Assembly (NCBI RefSeq): GCF_000150275.1
Contig: NW_002061020.1
Span: forward strand, 1-28,656
Length of the DNA stretch: 28,656 nt
Direction: 5' to 3'
Origin: Trichoplax adhaerens
Taxonomy: Eukaryota; Animalia; Placozoa
In this document: piece after piece, positions 1 through 28,656 of the stretch
Layout of the letters: every line of letters starts with the position of its first letter
Position numbering within the stretch: position 1 is the stretch's first letter
Notes under the pieces: model-generated
What the model saw: the letters and a program-made list of their open reading frames with translations, nothing else
Databases searched by the model: none
What the model was told of the DNA's origin: nothing
Translations under genes and position numbers: made by a program

Positions 1-2
1 AG

Positions 3-3204: not shown

Positions 3205-3248
3205 CTAGTACAAACTCCCGTCGCTTTGTTGACGGTTTACGATAATGT
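3205..3248 (-). mobile_element. Helitron-type 3' terminus (non-autonomous element end)
   Basis: The minus strand reads acattatcgtaaaCCGTCaacaaagcGACGGgagtttgtaCTAG|T: a GC-rich hairpin 9 nt before a terminal CTAG followed by T. It is 42/44 identical to 23015-23058. Confidence 0.75.
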
Positions 3249-3492
3249 TAAAGGCTCCACTGCTGGATAGCGAGGTGCTGCAAATGCAAAATATTGAGCT
3301 TGGCAATCATGAATTACAACGCTGTGTAATCTGCGATCCACTGCACTAAGACAACTACAAATTATCCCAGTATATCGTGTATTAGCATATTGTCGAAAAC
3401 TACTATCGCACAACTATTGTACAATACAATACTTGTATTGTATAATAGCATTGCTTATATTGATGTGAGCTGCATGCCCTAATAAATTAACA

Positions 3493-9295: not shown

Positions 9296-9749
9296 CTAGT
9301 TAAATACATTAAATTTAGACGATAAATAAATTATAGAAATATAATCATGATCATCTGTCAATCCTTCTTTTGCTAAAAAAATTTAGCTATACTTTATCCC
9401 TCATATTATCGTTATATCAGTAATAGAATTGAATATCTCAACCACAAAATCTAACATTATTCTTTTCTATTCTAATTATAGAATTCGAATCTATAACTAT
9501 CATGCATTTTAGTAATGACGTGGTTAACCGATCTCGATATCCATATACTGGTGCATCATTTACACCGTACATGACGAAAGCAAACTCGGCCCCTTAACTT
9601 TATTTTGTTGCTTGCGTAGACTTGTACAACATATAAAAAATACATGTAAAATACTCCGCTTGTAAATTTACTGCAGTATATCGCTCATTCTACGAAGTAT
9701 TATAAAATTATGACTGCTCAGTAAAATCTGGAATTATGTGACCATCGAT

Positions 9750-11505
9750 AAATTAGAAATGGAAATATTTTGAACGATAGCTTTCCATAAATATTAAACA
9801 TGCATAAAGGAAACTATACCCTTTTCGGTAGCATGGATTATAAATAATTATCAAACAATATAGGGTGCTACTTTGTCATGGCAAATTAGAACTTCCATAA
9901 ATTGTAATTGCAGTAAGTTCTTAGTTAACATACGGTAAGTATATGTAATAAAATTGGAAGGGATGTTTATCTATTATGAGCTATTTCAAGAGATTCTTGC
10001 TCCGTTATAACTAATTATATCAATGCATTAGTCTACCATGCCATTACAGATGAGGTCCAACGTTTGTTAATAAAAACGGACAAGTCTTCAGTCAATACGT
10101 ATGAAAAAATTGAGTACTCATGAATCTGTTAAAATTTCTTAGTAGTTTAATGGTCTTTATGGTAATCAAGATTTGTATCTAGAGGAAAAGTACTGTAGTA
10201 AAGATATTGCGCCACAGCATAAACACTGAAACTGAAACCTTAACTGTGGCAATTGTACAAATTCCAAGTAAAATCAAATTGCGGATAGTGAATATTACTA
10301 TAATAACTAGATTACGAAGTCTTCTACTACGGCTCCTCTTGATAAGGATAAAGCAATATTCCCAAAACCGATAAAGTTTTAAAATTGTAATAGGATTAAA
10401 GTAAATAAGTGAAGAATGATTTAAATCGAAAACATAAAAGAATAATAAAGTAGAGAATAGGCTAATAGATATTGACTTAAAATTTCATTTCAATGTCAGT
10501 GCAAAAGCTCTAAGAATCCAAATCAGAGGAAACATGTTTGGAAATCATTTCTAGGAGCACGTTGCTTAATGAAGTAATAATTCTGATGATGATTTAAATT
10601 GAAGGTATACTGTAGTTAAAACTGATGATATGGGAAACGATAAAGAGGAGAATGTGATTGATGATTATTTTATTTTAAGCATTTGCTTCAAATACTGTAA
10701 GCTACACTTTCAAATCATAATTGATGAACTTCTTGAAACGCGTTTTAATCGCCATTATTTAATTAACTGAGTAACCTCCATAATAATGATATTAAAATTA
10801 TAACTTAAAATTATATCCTTCATTCAAAATACAGGAATAAATAATAAAGCTGAGAGTTAATCCACGAATAATTTGATTTGAAACAGTAAATTTAAATTCA
10901 AATTCTAGAAAGCAATTTAAAAATAATTTCAAAGGTCTATTATTTGACGGAGTACTTCCAGCTCGGGAATAATTCAATTGGATGCATGAGTTTAATTGAA
11001 TAAAATAACGTATAAATGACGTAGGATCGAATTAACAAATGTTTTATCTAAAGATTAATTTCAAATGCTCTTATTGGAATACAGTGAGACCCGTATCGCT
11101 TCAATGAATCATTGATCAAAAGATTGTTAGCTCTAAAGCGTAACTCAATGTTAAATTAAGAATACGGAAAAAAGAAATAGTAAAGAATTTATTCTTCCTT
11201 AAATATTACTTCTAAACGCCTTAGTTAAGGAAGTACGTTTAAAACCCACATCAGAGAAAAACAAATAAAAATCGTTTCCAGGGCCTACACTTATGAAAAT
11301 AATTGAGCTAGTTTTACCGAAAGATGATCCAGAAACTGTCTGTCCTGTATTTTCCATCATCTACCTGTTAAAGGATAATAATTGCATTTCTGATTGGAAT
11401 GTCTTACTTGCTTGCGCTATTACTAATCTCGTAGTTGCTTTCAAGATCAGCACAATCACGTCAGCTAGATTTTACTTGAAAGAAATAGCTTCAATAGATC
11501 CTTAA
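9750..11505 (+). pseudogene. Heavily decayed intron-less ankyrin/helical-repeat gene (boundaries approximate)
   Basis: Allowing frameshifts, 9784-9882 reads SINIKHA.KG.TIPFSVAWIINNYQTI/RVLLCHG, in register with the ankyrin consensus IN.kD..G.TPLh.A...g..eiv..LL..G. Further fragments are NKIGRDVYLL*AI, EVQRLLIKTDKSSVN and SRGK/STVVKIL. ORF 11293-11505 has ISDWNVLLACAI, which resembles the motif at 12350-13002. Confidence 0.5.
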
Positions 11506-12349
11506 CGATGTCAATATGTAATAAAACAATAAGCCCACTAAATATAGATTCCGAATTTAGTTAATTAAAGACGTAAATAGCTTTAAATGGGTACTTCAAA
11601 CTCAAACAGTTATCGCTACATTACAGGATATTGAGTAGTACAATAATAAAATGGAGCTTGAATTAGTAAAGATCGTGATCAAAATACCATTCCTATTAGC
11701 AAGTTTCAAGGATATTAAATGTAACGCGGAAATGTATTAAGTACTATACTGTTGAGAAGAAATGGATTGCTTTAATGTCAGTTGGAAGTAAGATTCTCGA
11801 TTGTAATAAATTGAAAATTTTAAACCAGTTATAGTATTAATTAAATTTCAGTGGTTTTGGCATCAAAGGCTGTAATTATCTTGGAAGTCTATATAGTAAG
11901 ATAATCGAGTTATAAATTTTCTTTTAATGTATTGCTTTGTACAGAATACGCTCATGTTCACTTGAATAGGTGGCTTATTAGTATAAATTAAAGGCGATCT
12001 TTAACCATGGCGTATGCGATATTGTACTATTATTGATCGACTTTGAGTAATGAAAGCGATCAAGTTGAGGGTTGGTTCTAACTCAATCCTCCATTTTACG
12101 ATACTATACACTTTGGAGCATGAAATTTTGCAAATACTATTCATTTTAGATGGTCTATAGATTTGACATCCTGAGCCAGACATGGCAATAGTATCCTAGT
12201 TAGCCTGAATTTATATTTGGAGGGTATTATCCTTTGCATCACTTTATTTACTGAATGGTAAAATAGTAGATTTTATTTCATAAGTATAAAGCCTTTCTCG
12301 GATAAAAACTAAGAAATGTAATTTTAAAAGGCGACTTACGCGAAGACAA

Positions 12350-13002
12350 ATGAATTAAACGTATAGTACTATATTTATAACCGAAATAATCGTATTAATC
12401 AGTCGCTAGAGTAACTGCGTACTACAAGATTACTTTAATCCAAAATTTCGATGATTTTCCTTATAACTATAAAGTTTAATCTAAAGGATATTTATGTGAA
12501 GGAAGTGGAATGCTTGTAATCTATATTTTAGATTGATTCTTGAGAGACTATAGCATATTATAACATCATGTTCCAGTGAGAAAATTCGGAGTCTTTATCC
12601 TCTTCAACTATACGGTATTATATTGATAGGCGATTAGTCATATTAATCAGTTACTGGAGTGACTAGGCACTACTAGATAGCTTTAATTCAAAGTTTCGGT
12701 GGTTTTCCATATAATGTAAAGTGTAATCTAAAGGGCACTTTGTAAACAAGGCAGAATGCATGTAACCTATGTTTTAGTTAAGTTTCTAGAGAGACTTCGG
12801 CGTATTGTAACGTGATGCTCCAGTGAGCTAATTTTTGATGATTATCCCCTACAAATTTTGGCATGGAATTTAAAGGTGATCTATAGATGACAAGATGAGT
12901 TGAAATATTCTTGTCACATTTATGACAACTGTAAGTTACTAATAGGCAGTTGCTTGGAATAGTTGCTAAAATTTGAGCGATACGGAGATCATTTCTATCC
13001 AT
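12350..13002 (-). pseudogene. Decayed coding relic containing a diverged two-copy tandem repeat of about 248 bp
   Basis: Anchors attaatcag at 12394/12642 and gagact at 12544/12791 give a period of 247-248. Minus-strand translations GDNHQKLAHWSITLQYAEVS and EDKDSEFSHWNMML*YAIVS align, with a CAA>TAA stop in the second. Confidence 0.55.
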
Positions 13003-13224
13003 ACTGTGGAGTGTTAAGTATCAGTAGTTTTATCACTGACTCAGCAGCATGTTTTTCCACGTCGTATTGATATTAATACTTAAAAAATTTCTAAAAAACT
13101 GTAGAGATAACTTATTGCACTATGTCACTTTAGCTTACGTAACCCACTAAAGCTTAAATTAAAAAAATATCTTTTTATCGAGTGACCATACCGAGCACAG
13201 TTTCAAGTTATTGTAACTATCATA

Positions 13225-13832
13225 ATAGCGCAAGATTGTCAGGCGTGCCTATACTGCTGTAATAAAATTATATTACTGTAGTACCATAAATAACGTACAT
13301 AGTTCATCCACATAGTACTCTTGTTATATCAAATCTGGAAAGGTATAAATAGTCGTATTTTACTAGAATAAAATGAAGAAAATGGTGAATTAGTATTTTT
13401 AGGATAAGCAGCTATTAAGTTATCAAGATCGTAACCATATTGTTTGGTGACTTAAAGACTTTGATTAAGAAAGAATAGAATGATTTCTTCCATTAAAATA
13501 GCGGTTTAAAGATTTTTTTAAAGGGTTTTCAATAGCTGGTTACGATCTATTTACGATATTGATTTTACTTATTACAGCGGCGATCGTAAGGAATCATAAA
13601 AATACATTCATTTACAAGATCGAACATGCTATCGTGCCGCAGATTACAGTACTAAAATTATGGCGATTTAAGTAGCGCATCTTTAAAGAAGAAGATGACA
13701 TCTTTTATTTTTTAAGCACATCAGGGAGTGTGATCCATTCTGAATTAAGATATTACTGATGATAGTAGGGTGTAAGGATCCAGGGGGTGGAATGTTACTT
13801 CGCATTGTCTTTCATTAGCCTCTAATTAATTA
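13225..13832. repeat. Diverged direct repeat of about 600 bp, copy A (left of the ankyrin ORF)
   Basis: Colinear with 18595-18940 plus 19802-20036. Shared anchors: ttgttatatcaaatctg, atggtgaattagt, gctattaagttat, tttcttccatt, ggcgatcgt|aaggaatc, actaaaattatgg, aagatgacatcttttatttt, gaatgttactt, tctttcattag. Confidence 0.85.
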
Positions 13833-14219
13833 AACCTCTTCTGCACTATAATATGATACGGTAGCATCTGAAATATGTAGAGTCGAACATTAAAGCTAAT
13901 ACATTTAAAATATGGACGCTTTTGTGATCACCTTTACCGTTTAATAATACATAGCTTAGCCTGCAGTTATCATATTGTTTTGATTGGATTCACCTATGCA
14001 GCATGCTAAGACAATTTATATCAAAAATACTGCAGTCAATTTTAGTCGATTATCATTACTTTAGATCTATAATTAATAGTGAAGTACTGTTACTATGCAG
14101 TATAGGAGATCTTAATCCAGATTTGTAGGCACTGGTTATCGTAGAAAATTCAAAGACCATGTATTAAAAATCATGTTGAGTAAACCCTGAAATTTACTGT
14201 AACTTCTTAATTATATTTA

Positions 14220-14545
14220 AGCGAAGAAAATCGTATCATAACCACCGCTTTGAATATAATTAATATTCCTGTATGTTTCATATTCTGAGTCTTCGTATTG
14301 TATTCTTCATCTTTATATTCTAACCTTAATATTTCATCTAAACTATTGCAATTTGGAGCTGCTGTTATAATTTTCTTAATGACATCTGTTTAATTCTTGG
14401 TCAAGAATTACAGAAAAAAACTCTTTTCTGATTTCCCATTAATAAAATCAATTTTTATTGCATTTTGGATGAAGATATTGATAGTTCAAAATCATTACTT
14501 GCAATAGCATGCTCTGAAACACTTCGTTCATAATCTTCTCTTTAA
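14220..14545 (-). pseudogene. Decayed former C-terminal coding region of the ankyrin gene
   Basis: After frameshifts near 14540 and 14480 it reads EDYERSVSEHAIASNDFE/INIFIQNAIKIDFINGKSEKSFFL*FLTKN*TDVIKKIITAAPNCNSLDEIL. This aligns with the internal ORF segment VEFLINSGAEIDFKDSKTQEFFIFFAQENNMIMVRKILEAAENYDDLKFIL. Confidence 0.75.
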
Positions 14546-17500
14546 CAGACCTTCTAAATCATTCTGAGTTGTAGCAATATCCAAAATCGTTGCTACTAAG
14601 TTAGAACAGCCGGCATCCATTAAAAGATTAAGTAGCTGTAATGTTGTTCGTTTATAACAATCTACCTTTACATTATTACTTATCAGTAAATCTATGATCT
14701 TAATAAAAGCTGCTTCATGCTGCTCAAAATTCTCTTTTATAAAACTATCAAAAGATAGGTTAATTTCTTGGCTTTCAGAATCAGAAGATTTACTGTCAAC
14801 AGGTGTTTTTATGATGCGTAAAATGCTTTGATGTCGCTGGTTAATCTGCAGTCGTTTGAATCTAAGCATTATATCCTTGAGTATCTTTAGGAATTTCCTA
14901 AAAAGCACATCTAACCAATTCTCTCCGTAACTATCTGTAATTTTTAAAAATTTGTCTATAGATTTTTGATATAATTTCTGTATTTCTTCCTCCTGCGCTA
15001 TAGTGGCTTCGAGTTCTATACATTTTTGCGGTCCTATTGCAGTTATCAGCTCTTCTAGTATTTTTATGTTACTAGATTCAGCAGCGTAATGCAAAGCTGT
15101 TTTGCCATCATTATCTTGTATTTGAAGCAAATTACTAACTGCTTGCTGTTGTGATCCAGCTAACTTTCTTTGATCTATCCTTAGCCCTTGCATACATTCT
15201 TTTTCTCCATTTCTTGTTCTTCTTATTTTCTGTATTTCTTCCTCCTGCGCTATAGTGTCTTCGAGTTCTATACATTTTTGCGGCCTTATTGCAGTTATCA
15301 GCTCTTCTACTATTTTTGTGTTACTAGATTTAGCAGCGTAATGCAAAGCTGTTTTGCCATCATTATCTTGTATTTGAAGCAAATTACTAACTGCTTGCTG
15401 CTGTGATTCAGCTAACTTTCTTTGATCTATCCTTAGCCCTTGCATACATTCTTTTTCTCCATTTCTTGTTCCTCTTATTTTCTGTATTTCTTCCTCCTGC
15501 GCTATAGTGTCTTCGAGTTCTATACATTTTTGCGGCCTTATTGCAGTTATCAGCTCTTCTAGTATTTTTGTGTTACTAGATTCAGTAGCGTAATGCAAAG
15601 CTGTTTTGCCATCATTATCTTGTATTTGAAGCAAATTACTAACAGCCTGCTGTTGCGATTCAGCTAACTTTCTTTGATCTATCCTTAGCCCTTGCATACA
15701 TTCTTTTTCTCCATTTCTTGTTCCTCTTATTTTCTGTATTTCTTCCTCCTGCGCTATAGTGTCTTCGAGTTCTATACATTTTTGCGGCCTTATAGCGGTT
15801 ATCAGCTCTTCTAGTATTTTTGTGTTACTAGATTCAGCAGCGTAATGCAAAGCTGTTTTGCCATCATTATCTTGTATTTGAAGCAAATTACTAACAGCCT
15901 GCTGCTGCGATTCAGCTAACTTTCTTTGATCTATCCTTAGCCCTTGCATACATTCTTTTTCTCCATTTCTTGTTCCTCTTATTTTCTGTATTTCTTCCTC
16001 CTGCGCTATAGTGTCTTCGAGTTCCATACATTTTTGCGGCCTTATAGCGGTTATCAGCTCTTCTAGTATTTTTGTGTTACTAGATTCAGCAGCGTAATGC
16101 AAAGCTGTTTTGCCATCATTATCTCGTATTTGAAGGAAATTACTAACTGCCTGCTGCTGCGATTCAGCTAACTTTCTTTGATTTACCCTTAGCCCTTGCA
16201 TATGTTCTTTTTCTCCATTTCTTGTTCCTCTTATTTTCTGTATTTCTTCCTCCTGCGCTATAGTGTCTTCGAGTTCTATACATTTTTGCGGCCTTATTGC
16301 GGTTATCAGCTCTTCTACTATTTTTGTGTAACTAGATTCAGCAGCGTAATGCAAAGCTGTTTTGCCATCATCATTTTGTATAAGAAGGAAATTACTAACT
16401 GCCTGCTGCTGTGATTCAACTAACCTTCTTTGATCTATCCATGGCCCTGGAATATATTCTTTTTCTCTATTTCTTATTCCTTTTAACAACTCGCCAACTA
16501 TTTCTACATTCTTTCTAGCAACATAGTGCAAAGCTGTGTTGTCATCTCTATCTTTCATAAGTATTCTTGCTCCTCTATCTATCAACGTTTTAACTATTTT
16601 CACATAGGCACTCTCGGATGCGTAATGCAAAGCCGTTTTGCCTCTACAGGCTCGAAAATTCACTGGAGCACCATATTTTAACATCAGTTCAACAATCTCC
16701 TCATTACCTCTTTCTACAGCATGGTGTAGAGCTAATTTTCTGCAATCGCTTTTAGCGTTTAGAATAAATTTTAAATCATCATAATTTTCTGCAGCTTCTA
16801 AAATTTTCCGAACCATTATCATATTATTTTCTTGAGCAAAAAAAATAAAAAATTCTTGTGTTTTGCTGTCTTTAAAATCTATTTCTGCACCACTATTAAT
16901 AAGAAATTCAACTAATTCTGCACGTACGATTTCAAAGTCATCATCAAAACCGCCGTTCGGGTATAATTCTATATTATATAAGGGGGCATTACCATTATTT
17001 TGTTTAATATTTACCTCAGCTCCATTATCTACAAGTAGTTTAGCTATATCATATTGTCCTTGCTTAGCTGCATAAAGTAAAGGAGTTGTGCCATCGTCAT
17101 TACTAATATTTGCATCCGCTCCGTTTTCTATAAGTAGCCTGGCTATATTAAAATTGCTTCGTGAAACCGCAATAGACAAAAGTGTAGAACGAAATTCAGG
17201 TGAATCAAAAATGAAGAATAAATCTAAAGAAATATTGAAATTATCTTGAGATTTAATATTTGTATCTGCACCATATTTTGTAAGCAGTTTAACTATTTCT
17301 TCGTTTTCACTTATTACTGCATAACATAAAGCTGAATGATGATCATGATCTTGTATATTTACCAAAGCTGAATAAATATCATGATCTTGATTATCTACCA
17401 TAGTGGCATGTTCTAAAATTAGGTTAACAATATCTTCATTTTCCTCTATAGTAGCGTGATGCAAAAGAGTTTTTCCATCATTATCTTGAGCTTTTAGTAA

Positions 17501-18049
17501 GTGTAATAAATATCCTTGATTTTTTAAATGTGTTATATGTTCTTGATTTTCGCAGACTAAAGAATCATCTTCTGAGTTTGTAATTTTATCCTGATCCTGA
17601 TAGGCAGCCTGAATATCTCGATTCACGGATTCAGTATAGCTTCCATTTTCATCTTGAAGCAATGTGGAAGCTTTTGTTTCTTTCTGAAGCAATCTGGCGG
17701 CTCTTAGTTTTTTTATCCTTGCAGTTTCTTCTCTACTTCTCCGAGCCATTTGTGCTAGATTATCCAACAATCTTGGATTCTGTATAGCTTGTAAAATGGT
17801 TTCCAAGATGGCTAAATTATTTTTTTTAGCAAGCTTAGCCATAAAAGTCATATGCGAGTGTTCTTCAACCGTTGTAGTGATTGTACTAATGACAAATGGA
17901 TCATATTGAATTCTTAAGAAAAAATTTTTGTCACCATTCTTTACTGCTTGTCTCAAGACTTCAGCAAGTTTTTTCGCACTTGAATATTTTAAGCTTTTTG
18001 GCCCCGCTTGAGTTGAATTGCTTGACTGCGATAGTCTTCTTGTATCCAT
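14528..18049 (-). CDS. Single-exon multi-ankyrin-repeat protein (1173 aa) with six 84-aa expanded ankyrin units
   Basis: Uninterrupted 3.5-kb ORF. Canonical repeats include DDGTTPLLYAAKQGQYDIAKLLVDNGAEVN and RGKTALHYASESAYVKIVKTLIDRGA, followed by DNDGKTALHYAAESSNTKILEELI repeated every 84 aa. No signal peptide or TM segment is evident. Confidence 0.9.
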   Translation of the reverse strand: MDTRRLSQSSNSTQAGPKSLKYSSAKKLAEVLRQAVKNGDKNFFLRIQYDPFVISTITTTVEEHSHMTFMAKLAKKNNLAILETILQAIQNPRLLDNLAQMARRSREETARIKKLRAARLLQKETKASTLLQDENGSYTESVNRDIQAAYQDQDKITNSEDDSLVCENQEHITHLKNQGYLLHLLKAQDNDGKTLLHHATIEENEDIVNLILEHATMVDNQDHDIYSALVNIQDHDHHSALCYAVISENEEIVKLLTKYGADTNIKSQDNFNISLDLFFIFDSPEFRSTLLSIAVSRSNFNIARLLIENGADANISNDDGTTPLLYAAKQGQYDIAKLLVDNGAEVNIKQNNGNAPLYNIELYPNGGFDDDFEIVRAELVEFLINSGAEIDFKDSKTQEFFIFFAQENNMIMVRKILEAAENYDDLKFILNAKSDCRKLALHHAVERGNEEIVELMLKYGAPVNFRACRGKTALHYASESAYVKIVKTLIDRGARILMKDRDDNTALHYVARKNVEIVGELLKGIRNREKEYIPGPWIDQRRLVESQQQAVSNFLLIQNDDGKTALHYAAESSYTKIVEELITAIRPQKCIELEDTIAQEEEIQKIRGTRNGEKEHMQGLRVNQRKLAESQQQAVSNFLQIRDNDGKTALHYAAESSNTKILEELITAIRPQKCMELEDTIAQEEEIQKIRGTRNGEKECMQGLRIDQRKLAESQQQAVSNLLQIQDNDGKTALHYAAESSNTKILEELITAIRPQKCIELEDTIAQEEEIQKIRGTRNGEKECMQGLRIDQRKLAESQQQAVSNLLQIQDNDGKTALHYATESSNTKILEELITAIRPQKCIELEDTIAQEEEIQKIRGTRNGEKECMQGLRIDQRKLAESQQQAVSNLLQIQDNDGKTALHYAAKSSNTKIVEELITAIRPQKCIELEDTIAQEEEIQKIRRTRNGEKECMQGLRIDQRKLAGSQQQAVSNLLQIQDNDGKTALHYAAESSNIKILEELITAIGPQKCIELEATIAQEEEIQKLYQKSIDKFLKITDSYGENWLDVLFRKFLKILKDIMLRFKRLQINQRHQSILRIIKTPVDSKSSDSESQEINLSFDSFIKENFEQHEAAFIKIIDLLISNNVKVDCYKRTTLQLLNLLMDAGCSNLVATILDIATTQNDLEGLLKRRL
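14975..16487 (-). repeat. Coding tandem array, 252-bp period, about 6 units
   Basis: gcaaagctgttttgccatca occurs at 15091, 15343, 15595, 15847, 16099 and 16351 (exact 252 spacing). Inner units are near-identical. Confidence 0.97.
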
Positions 18050-18594
18050 TTTAATTTACCTCTATATACAACCATACTTGACTCGGTTATAAGTACTTTA
18101 ACTTTTATAGCTATATTTGCGCTTTAAACTAGAAAAAAGTATGCACCCTCATGGACTACTATCTTGATGTATCTGAAGATAGATATACATAACCAGGGAC
18201 TTCATGAATTCATAATAAATTATCAAGTTGCACAGTACTGTCTAATACAGCATAGTGTTAGCTTTCGGTAAAGGTTAAACTCAAGCAGACTCTCTCGACG
18301 CATATATAGGAAAGCAACAACTACGCCTATTTACAGTCTAGGCTTGATTAGAGGTCGTAAACAAACATGACAAATCTAGTAATTAAGCTTTAATCATAGA
18401 ATATCTTAAAAGGAGCATAAAAAAATCTGATCTTGAGTCGCTTGTTGCAATGGCAAAACAGAAGTACACAATTTGAAGATAGCCTTACGCGCTTGCGTAA
18501 AGAAATAACAGCAAAGATTCCTCATCAGACTTAAAGCTATGCATATGATTAACCAATATTATATAACATAACATATAACTATTATCCTTGTCAT

Positions 18595-20036
18595 ACAAGA
18601 TTATCAGATATGACTATGCTACTGTAATAAAGTTACCAAATCAACATAAATACGTAGTTTTTCAACAAAATACTTTGTTATATCAAATCTGAAAAGGCAT
18701 AAATAGGTGATGTTTGGTAAATTGTAAAGAAGATGGTGAATTAGTTATTCTTAGTAGAAGCGGCTATTAAGTTATGGAAATGGTAACCATACTATTTAGT
18801 GACGTAAGACTTTAATTAAGGAAGAAGGCAATAGTTTCTTCCATTTAAATTGTGACGAAACGATTATTTATTATGAATTTTTCAAGAGCTAGTGATGATC
18901 TGTTTACGATCTTGACTTTACATCTTACAATGGCGATCGTGATAATTAATCTTGTATCGCCGGAGAACGATACTGATGGATACTGTTTGGCTCGGATTTA
19001 TATGAAAGAATAATCGGATAGCTTTAGCTTAGGGAATAAAAAGTTTACTACATATCGCAACAGCTACTATTTACAGTACTTTTTTATGTCGACCTGTAAT
19101 TAAAGTGTATAACTGTCTTAGTCAATGCTAGTTTTAAAAGGCTTTCATCGCAAGGTTTTAGGAATAGTAGAGCAATAATTGATTACTACAAGAATCTAGT
19201 CTAAAATATAAAGTATTTCAAGCTCAGAGTGAAGTGAAGTCTCTTCTCCCTAGTGAGCTCATCTCTGCAGTTCTTAAATGTATTTCGCTAAATACATTTA
19301 CGACAACTTGATTAGTCTACAATCAGACATAAATCATCAAATGAAATAATTTTTCTCAAATAGAACCTCATCAGTACAAACTCCCGTCACTATGCTGACG
19401 GATTACATTGTTATAATATTAAAAACTCCCGTCACTTTGCTAACGCATTATGCTTTTATAATATTATACTTCTAGAATATTGTTTTACAATAATACTTCA
19501 AACGTGACTCGGCCTTGCGTTGCTATGCAAACGGATTACGTTGTTATAATTATACAATCTCCCGTTGCTTTGCTAACGGATTATGTTCTTATAATATTAT
19601 ACTTCTAGAATATTATTTTACGATAATACTAATATTAGTTATCAACAATTTCGAATAGAGTAGTTATCAATCATCTAATATTAGCTTCACGAAAATATGT
19701 ATTCTTAGTAACTTAACTATATCAAATATAGCTATCAATACAATCAAATATAGCAATCCACATAATCAAATATGGGGTGCATCGCTACACGACTAAACCA
19801 CAAGGAATCGCAAAAATAGATTCATATATAAAATCTAACACAATTACGTTGTACAAGATGACTAAAATTATGGTGATTTAATCAGTCCTTGATCAAAAAG
19901 ATGACATCTTTTATTTTATGGACGGCGAAAAGTCTTATCAATTGTGAATTACGGTGCTATGCCGAACATAGCCGGGTATAGGGATCTAGGCGACGAATGT
20001 TACTTTGTACTATCTTTCATTAGTCTCCGATTAATT
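18595..20036. repeat. Direct repeat copy B, interrupted by an insertion of about 860 bp (18941-19801)
   Basis: Copy A is contiguous at ggcgatcgt-aaggaatc. In copy B ggcgatcgt ends at 18940 and aaggaatc resumes at 19802. Confidence 0.85.
19371..19630 (-). mobile_element. Stack of four Helitron-type 3' hairpins ending in CTGA|T
   Basis: Plus-strand units are cccgtc-actatgct-gacgg, cccgtc-actttgct-aacgc, gcgtt-gctatgca-aacgg and cccgtt-gctttgct-aacgg. The pair of units is duplicated with a period of about 133 bp. The terminal tcagtacaaactcccgtc matches 3205-3222. Confidence 0.7.
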
Positions 20037-21414
20037 ACCAGCATTAAGGGTTTTATTTCGATTATGTTTCTAACTAGACAACCTATTAATTAAAAAACTA
20101 CAGTAAATTCGAGTACTTAAAAACACTAATTAAAATCTACTGTACTGCGTGATAGTTAATCATGGACTTAATATCGAATATAATCAACTAAAGTTTGGCG
20201 AAGAATAGTTACTGTAGAATAATAAAACTACATTATCACTGCTTAACAAGCTTTATATTTTCATTGCAAATTCACCGCAATATTTTTGATATTAATTATG
20301 CTAATTTACTACGCAGCTGAATCGGATCAAAACCACATGATAGTATGATAGCTGCGGGATATGCTACCCGCTATTGTTAGATTGTAAAATTTATTACAAA
20401 AGCGTAGGGTCGTTAATTGTAGTAGCCTTATAATAAATGTTAGACTATAGGCATTTTAGATGCTGTCATAGCGAGATTCTAGACAATTTATTTCAGTAAG
20501 TGTCCAGCAGCACTTTTAAAACAGACAAAATTCGTAAAATCTACGCATAACGATCGGTAAACCTACGATCCTGATGTACTGATTTAGAAAAATCATTTAA
20601 ACGATTTCTCGATATTTCATAAAATTGAATACGAAGTGAAATTTTTAGGTATGTTAAAAGCTATAGATGACAATCTTGTAGGTGCATAGCATAAGAACTT
20701 TACAGTCAACCAGAGATAGTACTAACGAGGATACAGTATATGTTCATCATTTCTTCTGTTGCATGCAATTTTACTTGAATTTTATCAAATACAATAAAAT
20801 ACACGTAAGCTTAATGTAAATTATGCTACTTTTCTTAAGTGCTTTATCAAATTAGTATTTCAGAGTTGTAATGCCAAACATGTAGCCACAACAAGGCTTA
20901 GTCCCTGGTATTAACAGTCTACGTTATCAAATTTATCTAAGCTTTCTAAGGGCATGAGCATTATTTTATACTAGTAGGTACTTAAATTTAAGTACCTTTA
21001 TTTAGTCATTAAGTTTTAAGATTTTATCCTTACAAGTAGCATTGTAATACTCGAGCACACTTAATAATTATTTAGTAATCGGTTAACGAGATGTGAAACC
21101 TTGCATACCGATTGCTAACGACCTTATCAACAGGTAGTAAATATAATCGTTCATGTAGCGTATGTTGTACTTTCTAAACTTAGAAGATATGCAACCAATT
21201 CCTTATTTCAATAGTCGTCCTTCTACAATCGATAAATCTTCTTTATTGAACTGGCTGATGTTGAAAACGCTAATTCAAAATCTATGTTATCCACATCTTG
21301 GATTACATCTATTGCTATAATATCGAAAATTCTCACTTTTTTATGCTGATAGTTGTCTTTTGCTTTGTTATGTAATAGATTTTGCAGTCTTTGTACCTAC
21401 AGTACAGAAACAAT

Positions 21415-24400
21415 ATGATGGCGCCGCTGTTAAGATGGCTGGTCATGCTGTATTTAGTGGGCTTATCTTTGCAAGAAGGTCAGTAAGGATCGATTTGATA
21501 TAGAATGAAATGTGATATAGCTTTTATTCGAGAGTTCAAATATAATTATTTGTCAACTTTTGCCTTTGTTAGGCAGGCATCGCAACTAAATAGTTAAGAT
21601 ATTATATTAGCTATAGACAAAAAATAAAATTATTTATTCTTGAAATAATTATGTCATCGTACAAAAAATGTATGTTAACATCGTACTGAAATCCTTAATT
21701 ATCGTCTAGGCCCAAAATTCTTTAATTTCAATCCTTTGAGAACCATGATACCATACTATACTCTAGACCCTCATCATGCAAAGCACTGATTTAAAGATGG
21801 CCAATGGAAAAGTTAATACATAATCAATTCCATTTACCGTATTTGCTTATGGAGTACACATTAATTAATGATATGGCCTGCAAATAAATTTATTTTTAGA
21901 ATACGAGCTTATTTATAATATCTTATCTATGCTTTACTATGGCACGACTCAACAACTGAGAATTGATATTTGTTCTGTACGTATTTAGTGTCAAATAGAT
22001 TGAATGCATTCCCATCTTCATACCATATATAGATAGATATAGTATATTGCGTAAGAGATTTCCAATAATTTTTTTTCCGGCGAAATAGTTTACTGATAAG
22101 TTTGTGTTCGGTTGGGTATAAAATTTCAGTATCGCAACTGCAATTTTCCTTCTAATGATGCATCCGCTACCTTTTCATTACGATCTTGTTTATCACTATA
22201 GTAGTAAATACGATACCTCACACAGTTGATTTTAGCCGTGCTATGCTGTTCTCGAGGGATATTGGGCCTTCTTATTTGGAACGTTGAAGGAATATTGCAT
22301 GCGGTATAGTGAATTGTAATGTAAGTATACGCGTATCCCACCCACCCTTTGGACGAGCAGCGCGGGGGTATTTATACTACTGTTAGATGACTTTGATTAT
22401 GGGTTCATTTCAATAGGTCAGTATAAGATTCTTACAGTACTTTTTACCTCAAGATTTCTTCATGTAAAACGAATAGCTCTAAGGTAGTCATTTCTGCAAA
22501 GTACTGATTTTTAAAATAGTATTCGTTATATCGTTAAGGGTGGCCACTGGGCCTTTCAATTTTGATTTGATGTAATACGCTGATAAAAATTGAATAAACA
22601 TAGAATCTTTACAGAGTTTTCTACACAGCCATTTTGATTGTTACTTTTTCTTATAACGGTTGTTATCGACAGAGTAAGCTTTGCTTGCATACGCAAGCGA
22701 TCCTTAGACACATTATAATGATTGGTATAGAATTGACCACAGTACTAAGGACATGGTACCGCACTGTAGATATCTTACAGTACCTGCTAATCTTAACTTG
22801 GTATGTCCATCACAGTACATTAGTTATCATAATGAGCTTTGTACCATTAACTAATCTTAATATAGTATTTCATAACATTTCCTCCGTCCATGTATTATTG
22901 AAAAGTAGTATTCTAGAAGCATAGCTGTGAATATAGTAGTGCCTGGCTATTACCGGGATATATGTAATGTCGAATGGTAATACTATCTGTTAATTATGAA
23001 CAAATAAGTACTGTACATTATCGTAAACCGTCAGCAAAGCGACGTGAGTTTGTACTAGTGTTACTTAATTCTTCACGGTCGCTCGTACAGTGACATGTAG
23101 TATTTTAGTATCGTATATCGTGTATATAGTTTATGATATTACCAAGAGTTATATTAATACATACAATACTTAATTACATCAACTTGTTTAGCTATGCTGT
23201 AACTGATAATGTCTTTGCGATAGAGTATATTATTGTTTATATAAATATTTATGTAATATTATAACGACAAATTTGTTAAATTTAAATATAATAGAGATAG
23301 TACTCGTGATAAGATTACAATGTACTGTGTAGTAATTAATTAACTGAGATATCTATGTTATTATGTTTACTAGATTCGAAAGTTGAGAAAAGTTCGGGAC
23401 GAGAGTTTTTTGTGGGTTTTCTAAGAATGAATTCCGTCCAACCACAATATATCACCATAACAAGTTATAATAAGCCAGCTGTTGTCAATGTTACAAATAA
23501 GTTTGTTAATACAGTTGACGAATACACCATTGCATCTTATGAATCAAAAACACTAACATTCGCAAATACTATGAACCTTTATATAACTGAATTGACTTCT
23601 AAAATCGTGCATATCGTCTCAGATGAAGATATAACAGTCAATAGTTTTTATATATATCATTCTGCATTGGCTTCAACATTAGTTTTACCGAGTCATCTAT
23701 ACGATAAGGATTATGTTGTCGCTGCGTATGATCGATACGCTTTCATCAAACTATTAATAATCGCTAAGTACGCCGACACACATCTTAATATCAGTTTCCC
23801 AGTGAGTACTTACTATTCTGGTGAATATTATTCAAGAAGTAAAAATTTGTCTATTACTTTACAATCTTCGCAAGGATTTCATTTAAAAACGAACAAACAG
23901 ATACCTGGCGCTATTGTCTATTCCGATAAAGATGTTGGAGTTTTGGCTGGTAATGAATGTGCATTTATACCTAGTAGTACGGGTAGATGTGATAGTACAC
24001 AAGAATTTCATTTACCTATTACGCGTCTTGGTAAAAATTATATTATATCGACGTTCGCTGATAGAACAGCTGGTGATATATATCGTGTTTTCGGTGGTCA
24101 TAATAATACGACAGTAAGTGTTAAAGTAACATCTCAAAATTATCAACTGTCTCGAGGAGATTTTGTAGAATTTGAATTAAACAGCGGTAATAGTTCGTAT
24201 GTTACATGCGATAAGCCATGCTTAGTTACTCAATTCGCGAAAGGAAGCCGAGTAGATAATACTAAAAGCGATCCATTCATGACATTTGTACCAGCAATAG
24301 AACAATATAGTCGAGATTACAATACATTTTTGCCGTCTCTTCTTACAAATGTACGAACTGATCGAAATTATGCGTTGATTACTATACAAGACAAATATAA

Positions 24401-27400
24401 GAACGGATTGATGCTAAACGGAGTAATACTACAAGATATTACCTGGCGACAAATCCTTACAAATACTGTTAACGAAACTTATGTTACTGCATCTGTTCCT
24501 GTTACAATTGGCGGAATAAGAATAACTCATAACGATTCTAACGCATTATACGGATTAATTAACTACGGCTGGAGTCAAAATTACGCGGGATACGGTCACT
24601 TAGGCGGTATACGAATTGTTAAAATCTATCCATGTAAGTTACTATTATACAATAGAAGTATTTAAGTGTTATAATAACATTGTAATTTTAGAATACAATT
24701 TCATTATTCTCCACGAGAAATGATTCAAATTTGTACTTGACGATAACATATTGTAGCATAATTAATTACAGAAAGAGAATCATATACAAATTTATAGAAA
24801 CAAATGATTGCCTTATTGTTGTTAATCGATATCTACTATGCACATATCATATTAATTTGGGTATAATTTTAAATTTTGACGGACTATAGATGCGCCGCGA
24901 ATCATTGAAAAATCCTCAAACATATATGTGTATGAAGGTAACATGACGGTATTAGAGTGTAACGCGACAAGCTCGCCGATATCTACTATTACTTGGTTAA
25001 AAGATGGAATCCCTGTTATAAATTATGAGAATACGACAATAGTCGAAGGTTTCTATATTTATAGTCGTTTAGTTATTACAGAAACGTTTATACACGATAT
25101 GGGGAATTATCAATGCGAATACGTTAACACAGTTGGATCAATAAGAAGTAATAACACATCGATAAAAGTAATCGGTGAGTCTATAATTGATGTATGTGAA
25201 TAAAATAAATTAAATATCACACTATGATATTTTTTAATATACTTATATCGATGAAATTAGAATAAATTTATTACTATTTAGTTTACTCGAGTTGAACTTA
25301 GATCGAATGCTTAATGTATGAATTAATTTAGCTCTGCATAAAATAATTATATTTAGGACTACTGGTGTAATATTAAACTATAATCATTCGCAGGTTCATT
25401 TACTTATTATAAAATCGAGTGATTTCTCGCTTATCAGACGCTTAAGTCGTTATTGATATCATACTTATATAATCTTTCCTTTAGAGACCGAAATATTTCA
25501 TAACTTAAAGAGTAGTTTTCTTGTTATATAATAACCTAGCCTCAGTATTTAACTACTATTCTAATTTTTAGATATTAATTTATACGAGAAAAGTATTTGA
25601 AGACAGTATAAATTAAGATAGGAAAGAAATATTGTAGTGAAATCNNNNNNNNNNNNNNNNNNNNNNNNNNNNNNNNNNNNNNNNNNNNNNNNNNTATTTA
25701 TGTATAGTCTCGATATTCTTATTGTACTCTATAAACTTATTACGTACTGTACATTGAATAGTGTAAATAATTTATTGTTATCTATCTAATTTGAATATAG
25801 TATATCCTGTAATTACGCAACATCCACAAAACGCCGACGTTATCTATGGTAACACTCTGATTTTACATTGTAATGGAAAAAGTAATCCTATATCTAACAT
25901 TACGTGGCTCAAAAACGGATATCCGATATCGAATTACGATAATGTTACATCGATTGATAACATTCACATATATAGTCGTATCACTATTAGAGAAGCAACT
26001 GTACGTGATAGAGGATTCTACCGATGTCGTTATAGCAATACAGAAGGAACGGCTATAAGTAAAGATGCAATTGTGACTGTTTACGGTAAGTACTGTATAA
26101 TGCATAGAAACATAGTTTAGATATTTCTAGTTACAGTAAAAATTATAATTGTTAAAAACGATATTTTAAAGTAGCTATAATAAATATAGTTACGATACTT
26201 CTTTAACTGATAACTGGTTTACATGATTTCCTAAACAATACTATAATTGATACCTTGTACTTGATAATACTGCATATAAATCAATACTACATAAACACAA
26301 AGTTTAGTTTCGAGATTGAAACTCAGTGTTACAGTATCATAAGCCAGCTATGTAACAAGATAACGCAAAGGTTAACTTGTACAAATAGAGACAATAGTTT
26401 ATGAGCTTATAACTTTACATCAGATAAAGCTAGCGAGCTGATTTTACTCAACTATCTGTCGGGCTTATATATATGTTATATATGTTATACACGTCGACAG
26501 CGGCTAACATTGATAAATCATCTTACAATAATACTCATAGACATACACATGTATCAATTGTTTTTACCTAATCAGACTACATTATGTCTATTCACAGAAC
26601 TATTTCAGTACACTTTCGATCTACTTTTAGCTAGAACTACGACTACAAGAGCTTGTAGCATAAACAATTATTATATAAGAATAACTATTACACGCCATCA
26701 TATTGTAACGTCAGTGATTCCTACTGTGAGTAATTGTGATCACTATATGTAAATATTAAACTCGCTAAACTTGGTTACTTAACTCTTCACGGTCGCTCTT
26801 ACGGTGACATGTAGTATTTTAGTTTCGTATATCGCGTATATAGTTTATAATATTACAAAGAGTTATATTAATACATATAATACTTAATTAATTACATCCA
26901 CTTGTTTAGCTATGGTGTAACTGATAATGTCTTTACGATAGAGTATATTATTGTTTATATAAATATTTATGTAATATTATAACGACAAGTTTGTTAAATT
27001 TAAATATAATAGAGATAGTACTGGTGATAAGATTACAATGTACTGTGTAGTAATTAATTAACTGAGATATGTATGTTATTATGTTTACTAGATTCGAAAG
27101 TTGAGAAAAGTTCGGGACGAGAGTTTTTTGTGGGTTATCCAAGAATGAATACCAGGCAATCATATTATCTTACCCTAACAAGTTATAATAAGCCAGCTGC
27201 TGTCAATGTTACAAATAAGTTTCTTAATACGGTTAATGAATACACTATTGCATCGTATGAATCAAAAACACTAACAATTGCAAGTACTATGCTTATTTTT
27301 AATTCTGAATTGACTTCTAAAATCTTTCATATCGTCTCAGATGAAGATATAACAGTTAGTAGTTTTTATATATATGCTTCTGTATTGGCTTCAACATTAG

Positions 27401-28656
27401 TTTTACCGAGTCATCTATACGATAAGAATTATGTTGTCGCTGCGTATAAACCATACTCTAACATCAAACTATTAATAATCGCTAAGTACGCCGACACACA
27501 TCTTAATATCAGTTTCCCAGTGAGTACTTCCTATTCTGGTCAATATTATTCAAGAAGTAGAAATTTGTCTATTACTTTACAATCTTCGCAAGGATTTCAT
27601 TTAAAAACGGACAAAGACATATCTGGCGCTATTATCTATTCCGATAAAGATGTTGGAGTTTTGGCTGGTAATGAATGTACACGTATACCTAGTAGTACGG
27701 GTAGATGTAGTAGTGCACAAGAATTTCATTTACCTATTACGCGTCTTGGTAAAAACTATATTATATCGACGTTCGCTGATAGAACAGCTGGTGATGTATA
27801 TCGTGTTTTCGGTGGTCATGATAATACGACAGTAAGTGTTAAAGTAACATCTCAAAATTATCAACTGTCTCGAGGAGATTTTGTAGAATTTGAGTTAAAC
27901 AGCGGTAATAGTTCGTATGTTACATGCGATAAGCCATGCTTAGTTACTCAATTCGCGAAAGGAAGCCGAGCAGATAATACTGAAAGCGATCCATTCACGA
28001 CATTTGTACCAGCAATAGAACAATACAGTCGAGATTACAATATATTCTTGCCGTCTGCTCTTACAAATGTACGAAGTGATCGAAATTATGCGTTGATTAC
28101 TATACAAGACAAATATAAGAACGGATTGATGCTAAACGGAATAATACTACAAGATATTACCTGGCGACAAATCCTTACAAATACAGTTAACGAAACTTAT
28201 GTTACTGCATCTGTTCCTGTTACAATTGGCGGAATAAGAATAACTCATAACGATTCTAACGCATTATACGGATTAATTAACTACGGCTGGAGTCAAAATC
28301 TCGCGGGATACGGTCACTTAGGCGGTATACGAATTGTTAAAATCTATCCATGTAAGTTACTATCATAAAGTAAAAGTAAATAAATGTTAATAATAATATT
28401 GCAGTTCTAGAATAAAATTTCATTATTCTCTACGAGAAATGATTCAAACTTATACTTGACGATAACACATTGTAGCATAATTAGTTACAGAAAGAGAATC
28501 ATATAAAAACTTACAGAAAGAAATGATTGCCTTATTGTTGTTAATCGATATCTACTATGTACATATCATATTAATTTGGGTATAATTTTAAATTTTGACG
28601 GACTATAGATGCGCCGCGAATCATTGAACAATCCTCAAACATATCTGTGTATGATA
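21415..28656 (+). CDS. Secreted or cell-surface modular protein: signal peptide - IgGFc-binding (FCGBP N-terminal-type) domain - Ig - Ig - IgGFc-binding domain - Ig...; runs off the window and spans an assembly gap
   Basis: Exon 21415-21478 (MMAPLLRWLVMLYLVGLSLQE, phase 1), then phase 1-1 exons 23374-24633, 24890-25174, 25801-26085, 27092-28351 and 28609->28656. The large exons carry FCGBP-N motifs SGREFFVGF, SDKDVGVLAGNEC, LPITRLGKNY, CDKPCLVTQF, SDPFMTFVPAIEQY and YGW....GYG. The small exons are I-set Ig (LEC..ITWLKDG..D.GxYxC). Confidence 0.85.
23015..23058 (+). mobile_element. Helitron-type 3' terminus in intron 1 of the IgGFc/Ig gene
   Basis: acattatcgtaaaccgtcagcaaagcgacgtgagtttgtaCTAG|T; 42/44 identical to the reverse complement of 3205-3248. 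Confidence 0.75.
23060..28656 (+). repeat. Recent tandem segmental duplication (23060->24937 vs 26774->28656, offset about 3.72 kb)
   Basis: Intron, IgGFc exon, following intron and Ig exon start are colinear and highly similar. Both copies begin gttacttaa(t/c)tcttcacggtcgctc. Confidence 0.95.
25645..25694. other. Assembly gap (50 N)
   Basis: Run of N; the true length is unknown. Confidence 1.

What the first reader, a model, noticed from the sequence alone, without database searches (positions are those of the whole stretch)
23374..28351. Duplicated IgGFc-binding exons with hypervariable patches: candidate diversifying recognition receptor
Seen: two 1260-nt exons whose flanking introns are nearly identical. 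By hand count they differ at about 48 of 420 residues, about 38 of them in the N-terminal half. The differences form patches (FLRMNSVQPQ/YPRMNTRQSY, NLYIT/LIFNS, YH/YA, DRYAF/KPYSN, AF/TR, NY/NL), often via 2-3-nt codon changes (cat>gct, ttt>cgt, tac>ctc). I see only roughly a dozen silent changes. All exons are phase 1-1 and so could be skipped or swapped. Known: this domain is the N-terminus of FCGBP-type mucosal proteins. Inference: a modular [IgGFc-Ig-Ig]n surface or secreted protein whose binding surface is under diversifying selection, possibly an undescribed innate-immune or self/non-self system in an early-branching animal.
Basis: partly seen in the sequence, partly recalled or inferred. 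Interest (0 to 1): 0.8.

Follow-up and report, generated by a model that had tools for sequence, protein, structure and literature searches.

The report
Fast-evolving duplicated receptor head, Trichoplax
Two recently duplicated head modules at the start of a Trichoplax surface-receptor gene keep a conserved core, while a small set of loop residues changes faster than neutral DNA, which makes this gene a candidate recognition receptor, with an unknown ligand.

Summary
Two 1260-nt phase 1-1 exons (23374-24633 and 27092-28351) differ at 75 nt and 48 of 419 residues, 38 of them in the first half.

The window is the whole Trichoplax adhaerens scaffold carrying TRIADDRAFT_62494. The N gap lies in the Ig1-Ig2 intron and breaks no exon. 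The 449 nt to its left probably belong after module 2. The tandem duplication is real, because scaffold C1397 carries the same pair without a gap.

Mean dN/dS is about 1. About half the codons are frozen, and 5-10% have omega of 11-30. This survives a mutational hot-spot control. There are no indels or stops, where about 17 and 7 would be expected under neutrality. The variable residues sit mainly in loops. The adjacent Ig exons are under purifying selection.

On C1397 the same gene continues into Ig/FN3 repeats, HRM, GPS and a 7tm_2 core, so it is an adhesion GPCR. This scan had already noted that family on other DNA of this genome.

Two things remain untested. Whether C1337 and C1397 are haplotypes or recent paralogues is unresolved. 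The self/non-self reading is also untested.

Verdict: a new variant of a known receptor kind, with credible diversifying selection on its head.

The parts
21415..21478 (+). Exon 1: start codon and signal peptide (MMAPLLRWLVMLYLVGLSLQE), ending in phase 1 with a GT donor
   Evidence: tblastn with the signal peptide of TRIADDRAFT_60863 gave 95% identity. The sequence was read directly. This exon is missing from the deposited model TRIADDRAFT_62494.
22337..23058 (.). Multi-copy element of about 720 bp (Helitron-like) inserted in intron 1, ending at the 5' edge of the duplicated block
   Evidence: More than 40 copies at 88-94% identity occur across the genome. It is absent at the matching site on C1397, where window 22336 and 23059 both map to 486703.
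23060..24935 (+). Copy 1 of the duplicated block (intron tail, head exon, intron, start of Ig1)
   Evidence: 93.7% identical over 1881 nt to 26774-28654.
23374..24633 (+). Head exon W1 (FCGBP_N / IgGFc_binding domain, 420 codons, phase 1-1)
   Evidence: Pfam PF17517 E 3e-59. AlphaFold2 model has mean pLDDT 90.3. It is 97% identical to a partial Trichoplax sp. H2 protein.
23418..23999 (+). Stretch of W1 (residues 15-208) holding the six variable loops (17-23, 63-71, 95-96, 115-123, 173-179, 197-205). The same stretch in W2 is 27136-27717.
   Evidence: Variable-site map and secondary structure. Sites with posterior above 0.8 for the omega>1 class are listed.
24890..25174 (+). Ig1 exon (285 nt, phase 1-1)
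   Evidence: Ig_3/I-set E 1e-12. dN 0.005-0.019 against dS 0.017-0.053 among copies.
25196..25644 (+). Intron piece that probably belongs downstream of module 2 (repeat-induced misassembly at the Ig1 exon)
   Evidence: 98% identical to C1397 481456-481009, which lies after module 2's Ig1. It is absent from the 118-nt Ig1-Ig2 intron of C1397 and apparently from the H2 contig, which ends 24 nt into that short-type intron.
25645..25694 (.). Assembly gap (50 N), inside an intron
25801..26085 (+). Ig2 exon (285 nt, phase 1-1)
   Evidence: Ig_3/I-set/Ig_2 E 1e-13. dN 0.024 and dS 0.090 against C1397.
26774..28654 (+). Copy 2 of the duplicated block
   Evidence: 96.2% identical to C1397 484672-481717 together with the Ig2 exon and long intron.
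27092..28351 (+). Head exon W2 (FCGBP_N / IgGFc_binding domain, phase 1-1)
   Evidence: Pfam PF17517 E 3.4e-60.
28609..28656 (+). First 48 nt of the second Ig1 exon, cut by the end of the scaffold
   Evidence: In register with 24890 (period 3719) and read directly.

Best explanation
The window holds the 5' end of a Trichoplax adhaerens receptor gene. It has a signal-peptide exon followed by two copies of a three-exon cassette: an FCGBP_N ('IgGFc-binding') head, then Ig, then Ig. The cassette arose by a recent tandem duplication. By homology with the nearly identical locus on scaffold C1397, the gene continues into further Ig domains, about 15 FN3 domains, HRM, GAIN/GPS and a secretin/adhesion-type 7TM core, so it is an adhesion GPCR carrying two heads on a long stalk (inferred for this scaffold, shown for C1397). 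About half of each head's codons are frozen. A small class (5-10%), mostly in inter-strand loops of the first 210 residues, accumulates amino-acid replacements 10-30 times faster than synonymous changes. Gene conversion homogenises the second half of the heads within each scaffold. The most likely mechanism (inferred) is that these loops contact a variable external ligand, either a microbial or prey surface or a partner molecule of another individual or gamete. The two heads would then give one receptor two specificities, with binding reported through the adhesion-GPCR core.
For: Structure and reality of the duplication: the exons, phases and splice sites are intact in all four genomic copies. 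An ungapped tandem pair lies on C1397 with a 3211-nt period. The deposited model TRIADDRAFT_62494 joins both heads. In the N-terminal part, informative sites group the copies by position, (W1,H2,C1) versus (W2,C2). Further along they group by scaffold, which indicates gene conversion.

Selection: M2a against M1a gives 2dlnL = 77 on the best tree (omega 12.9 in 9% of codons) and 36-45 in partitions. All four pairwise tests, which need no tree, are significant (p 6e-9 to 1e-5). A neutral hot-spot class with omega fixed at 1 is rejected (2dlnL 28.7 for five sequences; pairs p 0.044 to 2e-5). Substitutions are clustered 2-3.7 times above expectation only in the first half of the exon, not in 3.3 kb of intergenic DNA or in the introns. 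No indels or stops occur, where 17 and 7 are expected if the exon were unconstrained. dN in the first half (0.10-0.15) exceeds the divergence of flanking non-coding DNA (0.02-0.09). The Ig exons next door have dN/dS well below 1. Of the 28 hypervariable sites, 18 lie in predicted loops, against 40% loop content overall. An independent recent pair of the same family (L005/L006) has omega 1.07, and its replacements overlap the same positions (19 observed against 8.4 expected, p 7e-5).

Receptor class: Ig, fn3, HRM (24.9 bits), GPS (33.2 bits) and 7tm_2 (30.2 bits) exons lie downstream on C1397.
Against: Mean omega is not significantly above 1 in any region (p 0.28-0.9). Only five closely related sequences were available, and they recombine, which can inflate site-model tests. 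The pairwise tests lean on codons with 2-3 differences. The overlap of variable positions between paralogue pairs would also arise from shared low constraint. The scaffold ends after module 2, so the adhesion-GPCR body is inferred from C1397, and no second copy of that body exists in the assembly. No transcript, ligand or population data were available. Whether the variable loops form one surface could not be tested.
Confidence: 0.65

Rival explanations
1. Relaxed constraint only. After the duplication the redundant heads drift neutrally at surface loops, and nothing is being selected for diversity.
For: Whole-exon omega is about 1.0-1.3 and is not significantly different from 1. The variable positions are also the less conserved ones among distant paralogues (entropy 2.23 against 1.74). 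One other recent pair, L014/L015, has omega 0.31.
Against: With about half the codons at omega near 0, a mean omega of 1 requires other codons well above 1. M1a, the nearly neutral model, is rejected at 2dlnL 77. It is also rejected in tree-free pairwise tests and after allowing neutral hot spots. First-half dN exceeds intron and intergenic divergence. Twenty-two sites show 3-4 different residues among five sequences that differ by only 4-8%.
Confidence: 0.15
2. Targeted mutational process rather than selection. Patches would be written into the exon by micro gene conversion from diverged family members, or by multi-nucleotide mutation.
For: The differences come in patches with many adjacent changes (13-24 adjacent pairs per comparison). 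The copies look like mosaics of shared patches. dS is also about twice as high in the first half.
Against: The nearest other family members are only 45-49% identical. 14-mers shared with them are equally few (35-36) in all four copies, so none of the copies shows an excess that would point to donor tracts. Neighbouring non-coding DNA shows no clustering. A fast class with omega fixed at 1 fits significantly worse than one with free omega. Exchange of patches among the four copies is likely, but it shuffles variants and does not create them.
Confidence: 0.07
3. Assembly artefact. W1 and W2 would be two haplotypes of a single-copy exon that were scaffolded in tandem across the N gap.
For: The gap sits between the two copies. 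The left contig's end is probably misplaced. C1337 is a small 28.7-kb scaffold in a region with many gaps.
Against: C1397 carries both modules in one ungapped stretch. The contig right of the gap carries the Ig2 exon and the long intron ahead of W2, in line with C1397 at 96%. W1 is attached to the unique upstream region and the signal-peptide exon. The H2 contig shows a W1-type head followed by Ig1 and the start of the short-type intron that leads into Ig2 on C1397. N-terminal site patterns pair W1 with C1 and W2 with C2.
Confidence: 0.03

Closest known systems
FCGBP (vertebrate IgGFc-binding protein) and the FCGBP_N domain family (Pfam PF17517; Lang et al. 2016, PMC4948705)
   Same: The head exon matches the full PF17517 profile (E 3e-59). 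As in most family members it sits directly after a signal peptide at the N-terminus. Lang et al. report the domain in all major metazoan branches and in bacteria, with many different partner domains in invertebrates.
   Different: There are no VWD-C8-TIL units. The head occurs twice, each followed by two Ig domains. The body is an Ig/FN3 stalk on an adhesion-GPCR core. Placozoans have no IgG, so the name says nothing about the ligand here. As far as I could find, no rapid evolution of this domain has been reported.
Adhesion GPCRs, including the placozoan CTLD-headed secretin/adhesion-type GPCRs (Kamm et al. 2019, PMC6321704) and the FCGBP_N-headed loci noted earlier in this scan
   Same: The C1397 counterpart has HRM, a GPS motif (CYCNHTTTF) and 7tm_2 exons behind a long Ig/FN3 ectodomain. 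Kamm et al. describe placozoan 7TM receptors of this family with recognition domains as ectodomains.
   Different: The head is an FCGBP_N domain, which I did not find described for adhesion GPCRs. The GPS has HT|T in place of the usual HL|T. The two heads are a very recent duplicate (84-89% identical), whereas heads in other two-headed family members are 26-37% identical. There is a signal of positive selection in the head loops.
Invertebrate diversified recognition receptors (Hydractinia Alr1/Alr2, Botryllus fuhc, snail FREPs, amphioxus VCBPs); comparison from my own knowledge
   Same: They share a membrane-distal domain with hypervariable patches, replacements exceeding silent changes at a subset of sites, tandem duplication, and patch exchange between copies.
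   Different: The domain is of another type, and signalling would run through a 7TM core. No population polymorphism, phenotype or ligand is known here. Allelic status is unresolved.
Dscam-type mutually exclusive exon arrays; comparison from my own knowledge
   Same: Both have duplicated, symmetric-phase exons that encode variant versions of one recognition domain.
   Different: There are only two copies, and they are separated by two constitutive-looking Ig exons. The deposited model and the cassette layout indicate tandem inclusion. No transcript evidence was available.

Membership tests
FCGBP_N / IgGFc_binding domain family (PF17517) | Significant full-length match to the family profile | tested here: met
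   201 and 204 bits against a cut-off of 25.6, covering profile positions 2-297 of 297, in both exons.
FCGBP_N / IgGFc_binding domain family (PF17517) | N-terminal position behind a signal peptide (typical of the family, Lang et al. 2016) | tested here: met
   The signal-peptide exon 21415-21478 splices in phase 1 onto W1. W2 is internal, which is atypical.
FCGBP orthologue (mucus protein) | Multiple VWD-C8-TIL units after the N domain | tested here: not met
   No such units occur in the window or in 20 kb downstream on C1397. Ig, fn3, HRM, GPS and 7tm_2 are found there.
Adhesion GPCR | Secretin/adhesion-type 7TM core | tested here: inconclusive
   The window ends after module 2. On the 92-96% identical C1397 locus, 7tm_2 exons score 30.2 and 17.2 bits against a cut-off of 20.6. 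No second copy of that body exists in the assembly.
Adhesion GPCR | GAIN domain with a GPS motif just before TM1 | tested here: inconclusive
   On C1397, GPS scores 33.2 bits (cut-off 22.5) with the motif CYCNHTTTFATIL, and a partial HRM scores 24.9 bits. Neither is present in the window itself. Autoproteolysis cannot be tested here.
Gene under diversifying (positive) selection | A codon class with omega above 1 that is supported against nearly neutral and hot-spot-neutral models | tested here: met
   M2a against M1a gives 2dlnL 77; pairwise values are 22-39; the free-omega against omega=1 fast-class test gives 28.7. Caveats: only five sequences, and they recombine.
Gene under diversifying (positive) selection | Mean dN/dS significantly above 1 over the region | tested here: not met
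   Omega is 1.04-1.16 for the exon and 1.25-1.58 for codons 1-210, with p 0.3-0.9 against omega = 1.
Allorecognition / self-non-self locus | High allelic polymorphism in populations that segregates with fusion or rejection | not testable with these tools
   Only the reference assembly and one H2 contig were reachable. Whether C1337 and C1397 are alleles is unresolved.
Mutually exclusive exon array | Transcripts that carry one or the other variant exon | not testable with these tools
   No transcript data were available. The cassette layout and the deposited model suggest tandem inclusion.

The most novel reading that the evidence does not exclude
C1337 and C1397 are two haplotypes of one locus, and the heads are held polymorphic by balancing selection, with 37-53 amino-acid differences per head between alleles in a genome whose average SNP rate is about 1%. 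The FCGBP_N-headed adhesion GPCR would then be a placozoan specificity determinant for self/non-self, mating or microbe discrimination, with recognition loops on a fold that has no solved relative and with direct G-protein output.
Probability: 0.15. Interest if true: 0.85.

Novelty: new variant of a known kind. Interest (0 to 1): 0.55.

Why it matters
Placozoans are among the simplest animals, and no polymorphic recognition receptor is known for them. This gene has an ancient, functionally obscure domain (FCGBP_N) as its head. That head shows the molecular signature of a binding surface in an arms race or a specificity system, and it is coupled to an adhesion-GPCR core. If confirmed, it would give a testable candidate for how early-branching animals discriminate microbes, prey or conspecifics. 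It would also give the FCGBP_N domain, whose role in vertebrate mucus is still unclear, a first hint of where its binding surface lies. The claim is limited: it rests on five sequences from a fragmented 2008 assembly, and the receptor family itself was already noted elsewhere in this scan.

Tried and rejected
- **Fold relatives.** Foldseek against the PDB gave only low-TM multi-sandwich matches (TM up to 0.15). VIA-align against 48,161 chains gave a best Z of 5.0, for residues 4-108 against TM1070. A profile search of PDB sequences found nothing at E up to 1. No fold assignment is made.
- **N-terminal piece alone.** Folding the first 112 residues alone dropped pLDDT to 75, against about 90 in the whole model, so this part is not an autonomous domain. 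I did not search with that model.
- **One-surface test.** Model coordinates are not exposed, so I could only use secondary-structure elements.
- **Haplotype or paralogue.** Window 12988-28656 lines up with C1397 islands 568254-565027 plus 493556-481717, at 100% falling to 92%, and the downstream body is single-copy in the assembly. Both points favour a haplotig. Three points favour a second locus: window 2400-12988 has no near-identical partner; there is a third version of 18284-19514 (C1067, 99.9% to C1397); and non-coding divergence is 2-5% against a genome SNP rate of 1%. C1397 495702-565026 reads N. The question is unresolved.
- **More placozoan copies.** Word searches with W1 and with the deposited 1017-aa model found only one close H2 fragment. 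The length filter would hide a full-length receptor.
- **Conversion donors.** 14-mers shared with distant paralogues are equally few in all four copies, so no copy shows a donor-like excess.
- **Literature.** Searches for Trichoplax with IgGFc or FCGBP, for placozoan adhesion GPCRs, and for the three locus tags found no description of this gene or its family.
- I did not build or search a joined spliced protein; exons were searched one by one by reference, and the only multi-exon query was the database's own record P0006. The large HMMER representative search was not run, because Pfam and the word search had already placed the protein.
Full report
**What is there**

The window is the entire 28,656-bp scaffold C1337 of a 105.6-Mb, 1414-scaffold assembly. 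Protein hits identify it as Trichoplax adhaerens. The deposited model on this scaffold is TRIADDRAFT_62494 (1017 aa), which already joins both head exons in tandem.

Reading the sequence gives this gene start on the + strand:
- a signal-peptide exon at 21415-21478, missed by the deposited model
- head exon W1 at 23374-24633
- Ig1 at 24890-25174
- Ig2 at 25801-26085
- head exon W2 at 27092-28351
- the first 48 nt of a second Ig1 exon, cut by the scaffold end

Every internal exon is a multiple of 3 and in phase 1-1. Both heads match Pfam IgGFc_binding over the whole profile (E about 1e-59). The duplicated block is 23060-24935 = 26774-28654 at 93.7% identity.

The counts are exact. The two heads differ at 75 nt and 48 of 419 residues, 38 of them in the first half. 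Nine codons are purely synonymous and 16 differ at 2-3 nt. All quoted patches and codon changes are present.

**The gap**

The 50 N (25645-25694) lie in the Ig1-Ig2 intron, so no frame crosses them. The layout around the gap is probably wrong, for four reasons:
- Window 24953-25643 is 98% identical to the sequence that follows the second module's Ig1 on scaffold C1397, while the rest of the W1 unit is only 89-95% identical to either C1397 unit.
- On C1397 the Ig1-Ig2 intron is only 118 nt and lacks this piece.
- The Trichoplax sp. H2 contig NOWV01001093.1 ends 24 nt into the same short-type intron.
- The contig right of the gap is bounded on both sides by Ig1 copies.

The simplest reading is a repeat collapse at the near-identical Ig1 exons, so that 25196-25644 belongs after module 2.

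This does not touch the main point. C1397 carries two intact heads (C1 at 486491-485232 and C2 at 483280-482021, minus strand) 3211 nt apart in an ungapped stretch. W1 is tied to the unique upstream region and the signal-peptide exon. W2 is tied to Ig2 and the long intron. The mis-scaffolded-haplotypes explanation is therefore rejected.

**How the copies relate**

Five versions of the exon could be compared: W1, W2, C1, C2 and the H2 contig. All are 1260 nt, open, and have the same splice sites. Pairwise differences run from 18 nt and 13 aa (W1-H2) to 105 nt and 66 aa (C1-C2).

In the first 470 nt or so, informative sites group (W1,H2,C1) against (W2,C2), which is grouping by position in the gene. 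Further along they increasingly group by scaffold (W1,H2,W2 against C1,C2), which is the mark of gene conversion between the tandem heads. The duplication therefore predates the C1337/C1397 split, and the second half of the heads is being homogenised while the first half is not.

**Selection**

Pairwise dN/dS is 0.9-1.3 for the exon, 1.2-2.2 for codons 1-210 and 0.4-0.9 for codons 211-419. dS is also about twice as high in the first half, so part of the contrast is deeper divergence. None of these averages differs significantly from 1. The heterogeneity among sites, however, is strong:
M2a beats M1a by 2dlnL = 77 on the best tree, with 47% of codons at omega 0, 44% at omega 1 and 9% at omega 12.9.
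- The margin is 36-45 when the exon is split at the recombination switch.
- It is 22-39 in the four pairwise comparisons, which need no tree.
- These tests could mistake mutational hot spots for selection, so I added a model in which the fast class has a higher overall rate with omega fixed at 1. Freeing omega improves it by 2dlnL 28.7 for five sequences, and by p 0.044 to 2e-5 for the pairs. The fitted omega is 11-30.

Independent controls point the same way:
- Substitutions are clustered (next difference within 2 nt) 2-3.7 times more than expected in the first half of the exon. They are not clustered in 3.3 kb of intergenic DNA, the long intron or the flanking introns.
- Non-coding DNA carries about one indel per 300 nt, or 0.089 per substitution. 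The exons carry none where about 17 are expected, and no stop where about 7 are expected.
- First-half dN (0.10-0.15) exceeds flanking non-coding divergence (0.02-0.09).
- The Ig exons in the same cassette have dN 0.005-0.024 against dS 0.017-0.09.

**Where the changes fall**

An AlphaFold2 model of W1, built on 19 family members from this genome, is confident (pLDDT 90.3, pTM 0.91) and almost all-beta.

Of 88 variable positions, the dense runs are the loops 17-23 (6 of 7 residues), 63-71 (7 of 9), 95-96, 115-123 (5 of 9), 173-179 (4 of 7) and 197-205 (7 of 9). Of the 28 hypervariable sites, 18 lie in loops. In the first beta-meander every second loop is variable (17-23, 42-45 and 63-71 are; 31-34 and 53-56 are not). 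That is what one end of a sandwich would give, but without coordinates this is only a hint.

No solved structure resembles the model. The first 112 residues do not fold confidently alone.

**A replicate in the family**

The genome has at least 23 head exons. Another recent pair, L005 (C1369) and L006 (C1402), is 90% identical with omega 1.07. It has 41 replacement against 13 silent codons, and its replacements overlap the W/C variable positions (19 observed against 8.4 expected, p 7e-5). The pair L014/L015 is under purifying selection, with omega 0.31. Shared low constraint could also produce the overlap, so this is supportive rather than decisive.

**What protein it is**

On C1397 the open frames downstream of C2 are Ig, Ig, about 15 fn3 exons, Ig, a partial HRM, a GPS motif (CYCNHTTTFATIL, 33.2 bits) and 7tm_2 exons (30.2 bits). 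This is an adhesion GPCR with two FCGBP_N heads.

Earlier notes of this scan describe about nine such head-capped adhesion-GPCR loci on other DNA of this genome. I confirmed the architecture for the C1397 locus only. For the window itself the body is inferred, because the scaffold ends and the assembly holds no second copy of the body.

In the literature:
- Lang et al. 2016 define FCGBP_N and note its N-terminal position and varied partners in invertebrates.
- Kamm et al. 2019 describe placozoan CTLD-headed secretin/adhesion GPCRs as likely pattern receptors.
- I found no description of FCGBP_N-headed receptors or of this gene.

**Haplotypes or paralogues?**

Window 12988-28656 is collinear with C1397 (568254-565027, then 493556-481717). 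Identity is 100% at 12988-14699 and falls to 92-98.6% further on. The downstream gene body is single-copy in the assembly. Both points fit a haplotig.

Against that:
- The non-coding divergence of 2-5% is several times the 1% SNP rate reported for this genome (PMC6057997).
- Window 2400-12988 has only 66-71% partners.
- A third version of 18284-19514 exists on C1067, 99.9% identical to C1397.
- C1397 has a 69-kb run of N beside the locus, which may hide sequence.

The W1 type is present in the H2 lineage at 97.7% identity. I leave this open at roughly even odds. Either way the selection signal stands. If the two scaffolds are alleles, each head differs by 37-53 residues between haplotypes.

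**Verdict**

This is the duplicated, fast-evolving head region of a placozoan adhesion-GPCR-type receptor, with credible but thinly sampled evidence for diversifying selection on head loops. The immune or self/non-self role, alternative exon use and the one-surface claim remain untested.

No contig looked human.

Noticed in passing
window 22337-23058: A multi-copy element of about 720 bp (more than 40 genomic copies at 88-94%, ending ...CTAGT, Helitron-like) lies in intron 1. It ends within a few bases of the 5' boundary of the duplicated block. It is absent from the matching site on C1397, so the insertion differs between the two versions of the locus. All four units start at the same sequence (GTTACTTAAT/CTCTTCAC...).
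   Followed up: partly
window 14531-18055 (-): An intron-less 1175-aa ankyrin-repeat ORF (Ank_2 E 3e-85) contains six 252-nt tandem units at 14972-16531. On C1397 the same gene is broken by assembly gaps inside this array, and its two halves lie 72 kb apart in scaffold coordinates.
   Followed up: partly
window 1-12465 vs C1397 465606-455735: The left third of the scaffold is collinear with the region just downstream of the C1397 receptor gene. Identity is 97% for the first 2.4 kb and only 66-71% after that. This looks like an old segmental duplication with a recently exchanged or transposed end. The stretch includes a Cupin_8/JmjC-like gene at 3586-5134 (+).
   Followed up: partly
G000:C1397:495702-565026: A run of 69,325 N (an assembly gap or a withheld stretch) lies directly beside the paralogous or allelic locus. 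Islands at 565027-568254 are 98-100% identical to window 12988-16039.
   Followed up: no
L005 (C1369:56965-58203) and L006 (C1402:1634550-1635788): A second recent pair of FCGBP_N heads (90% aa identity) has omega 1.07, with replacements in the same loops as the W/C copies. Again one member sits on a small scaffold and the other on a large one.
   Followed up: partly
Deposited models TRIADDRAFT_62494 (window) and TRIADDRAFT_60863 (C1397): Both deposited gene models are faulty. 62494 starts at an internal Met and lacks the signal-peptide exon. Both read through the donor after a head exon into the intron (ending ...CKLLS). 60863 stops after the first head although the gene continues for about 20 kb.
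   Followed up: yes
C1397 467856-467653 (-), locus L029:2654-2857: The GPS motif of the C1397 receptor reads CYCNHTTTF, with HT|T where adhesion GPCRs usually have HL|T. Autoproteolysis may therefore be altered or absent.
   Followed up: no
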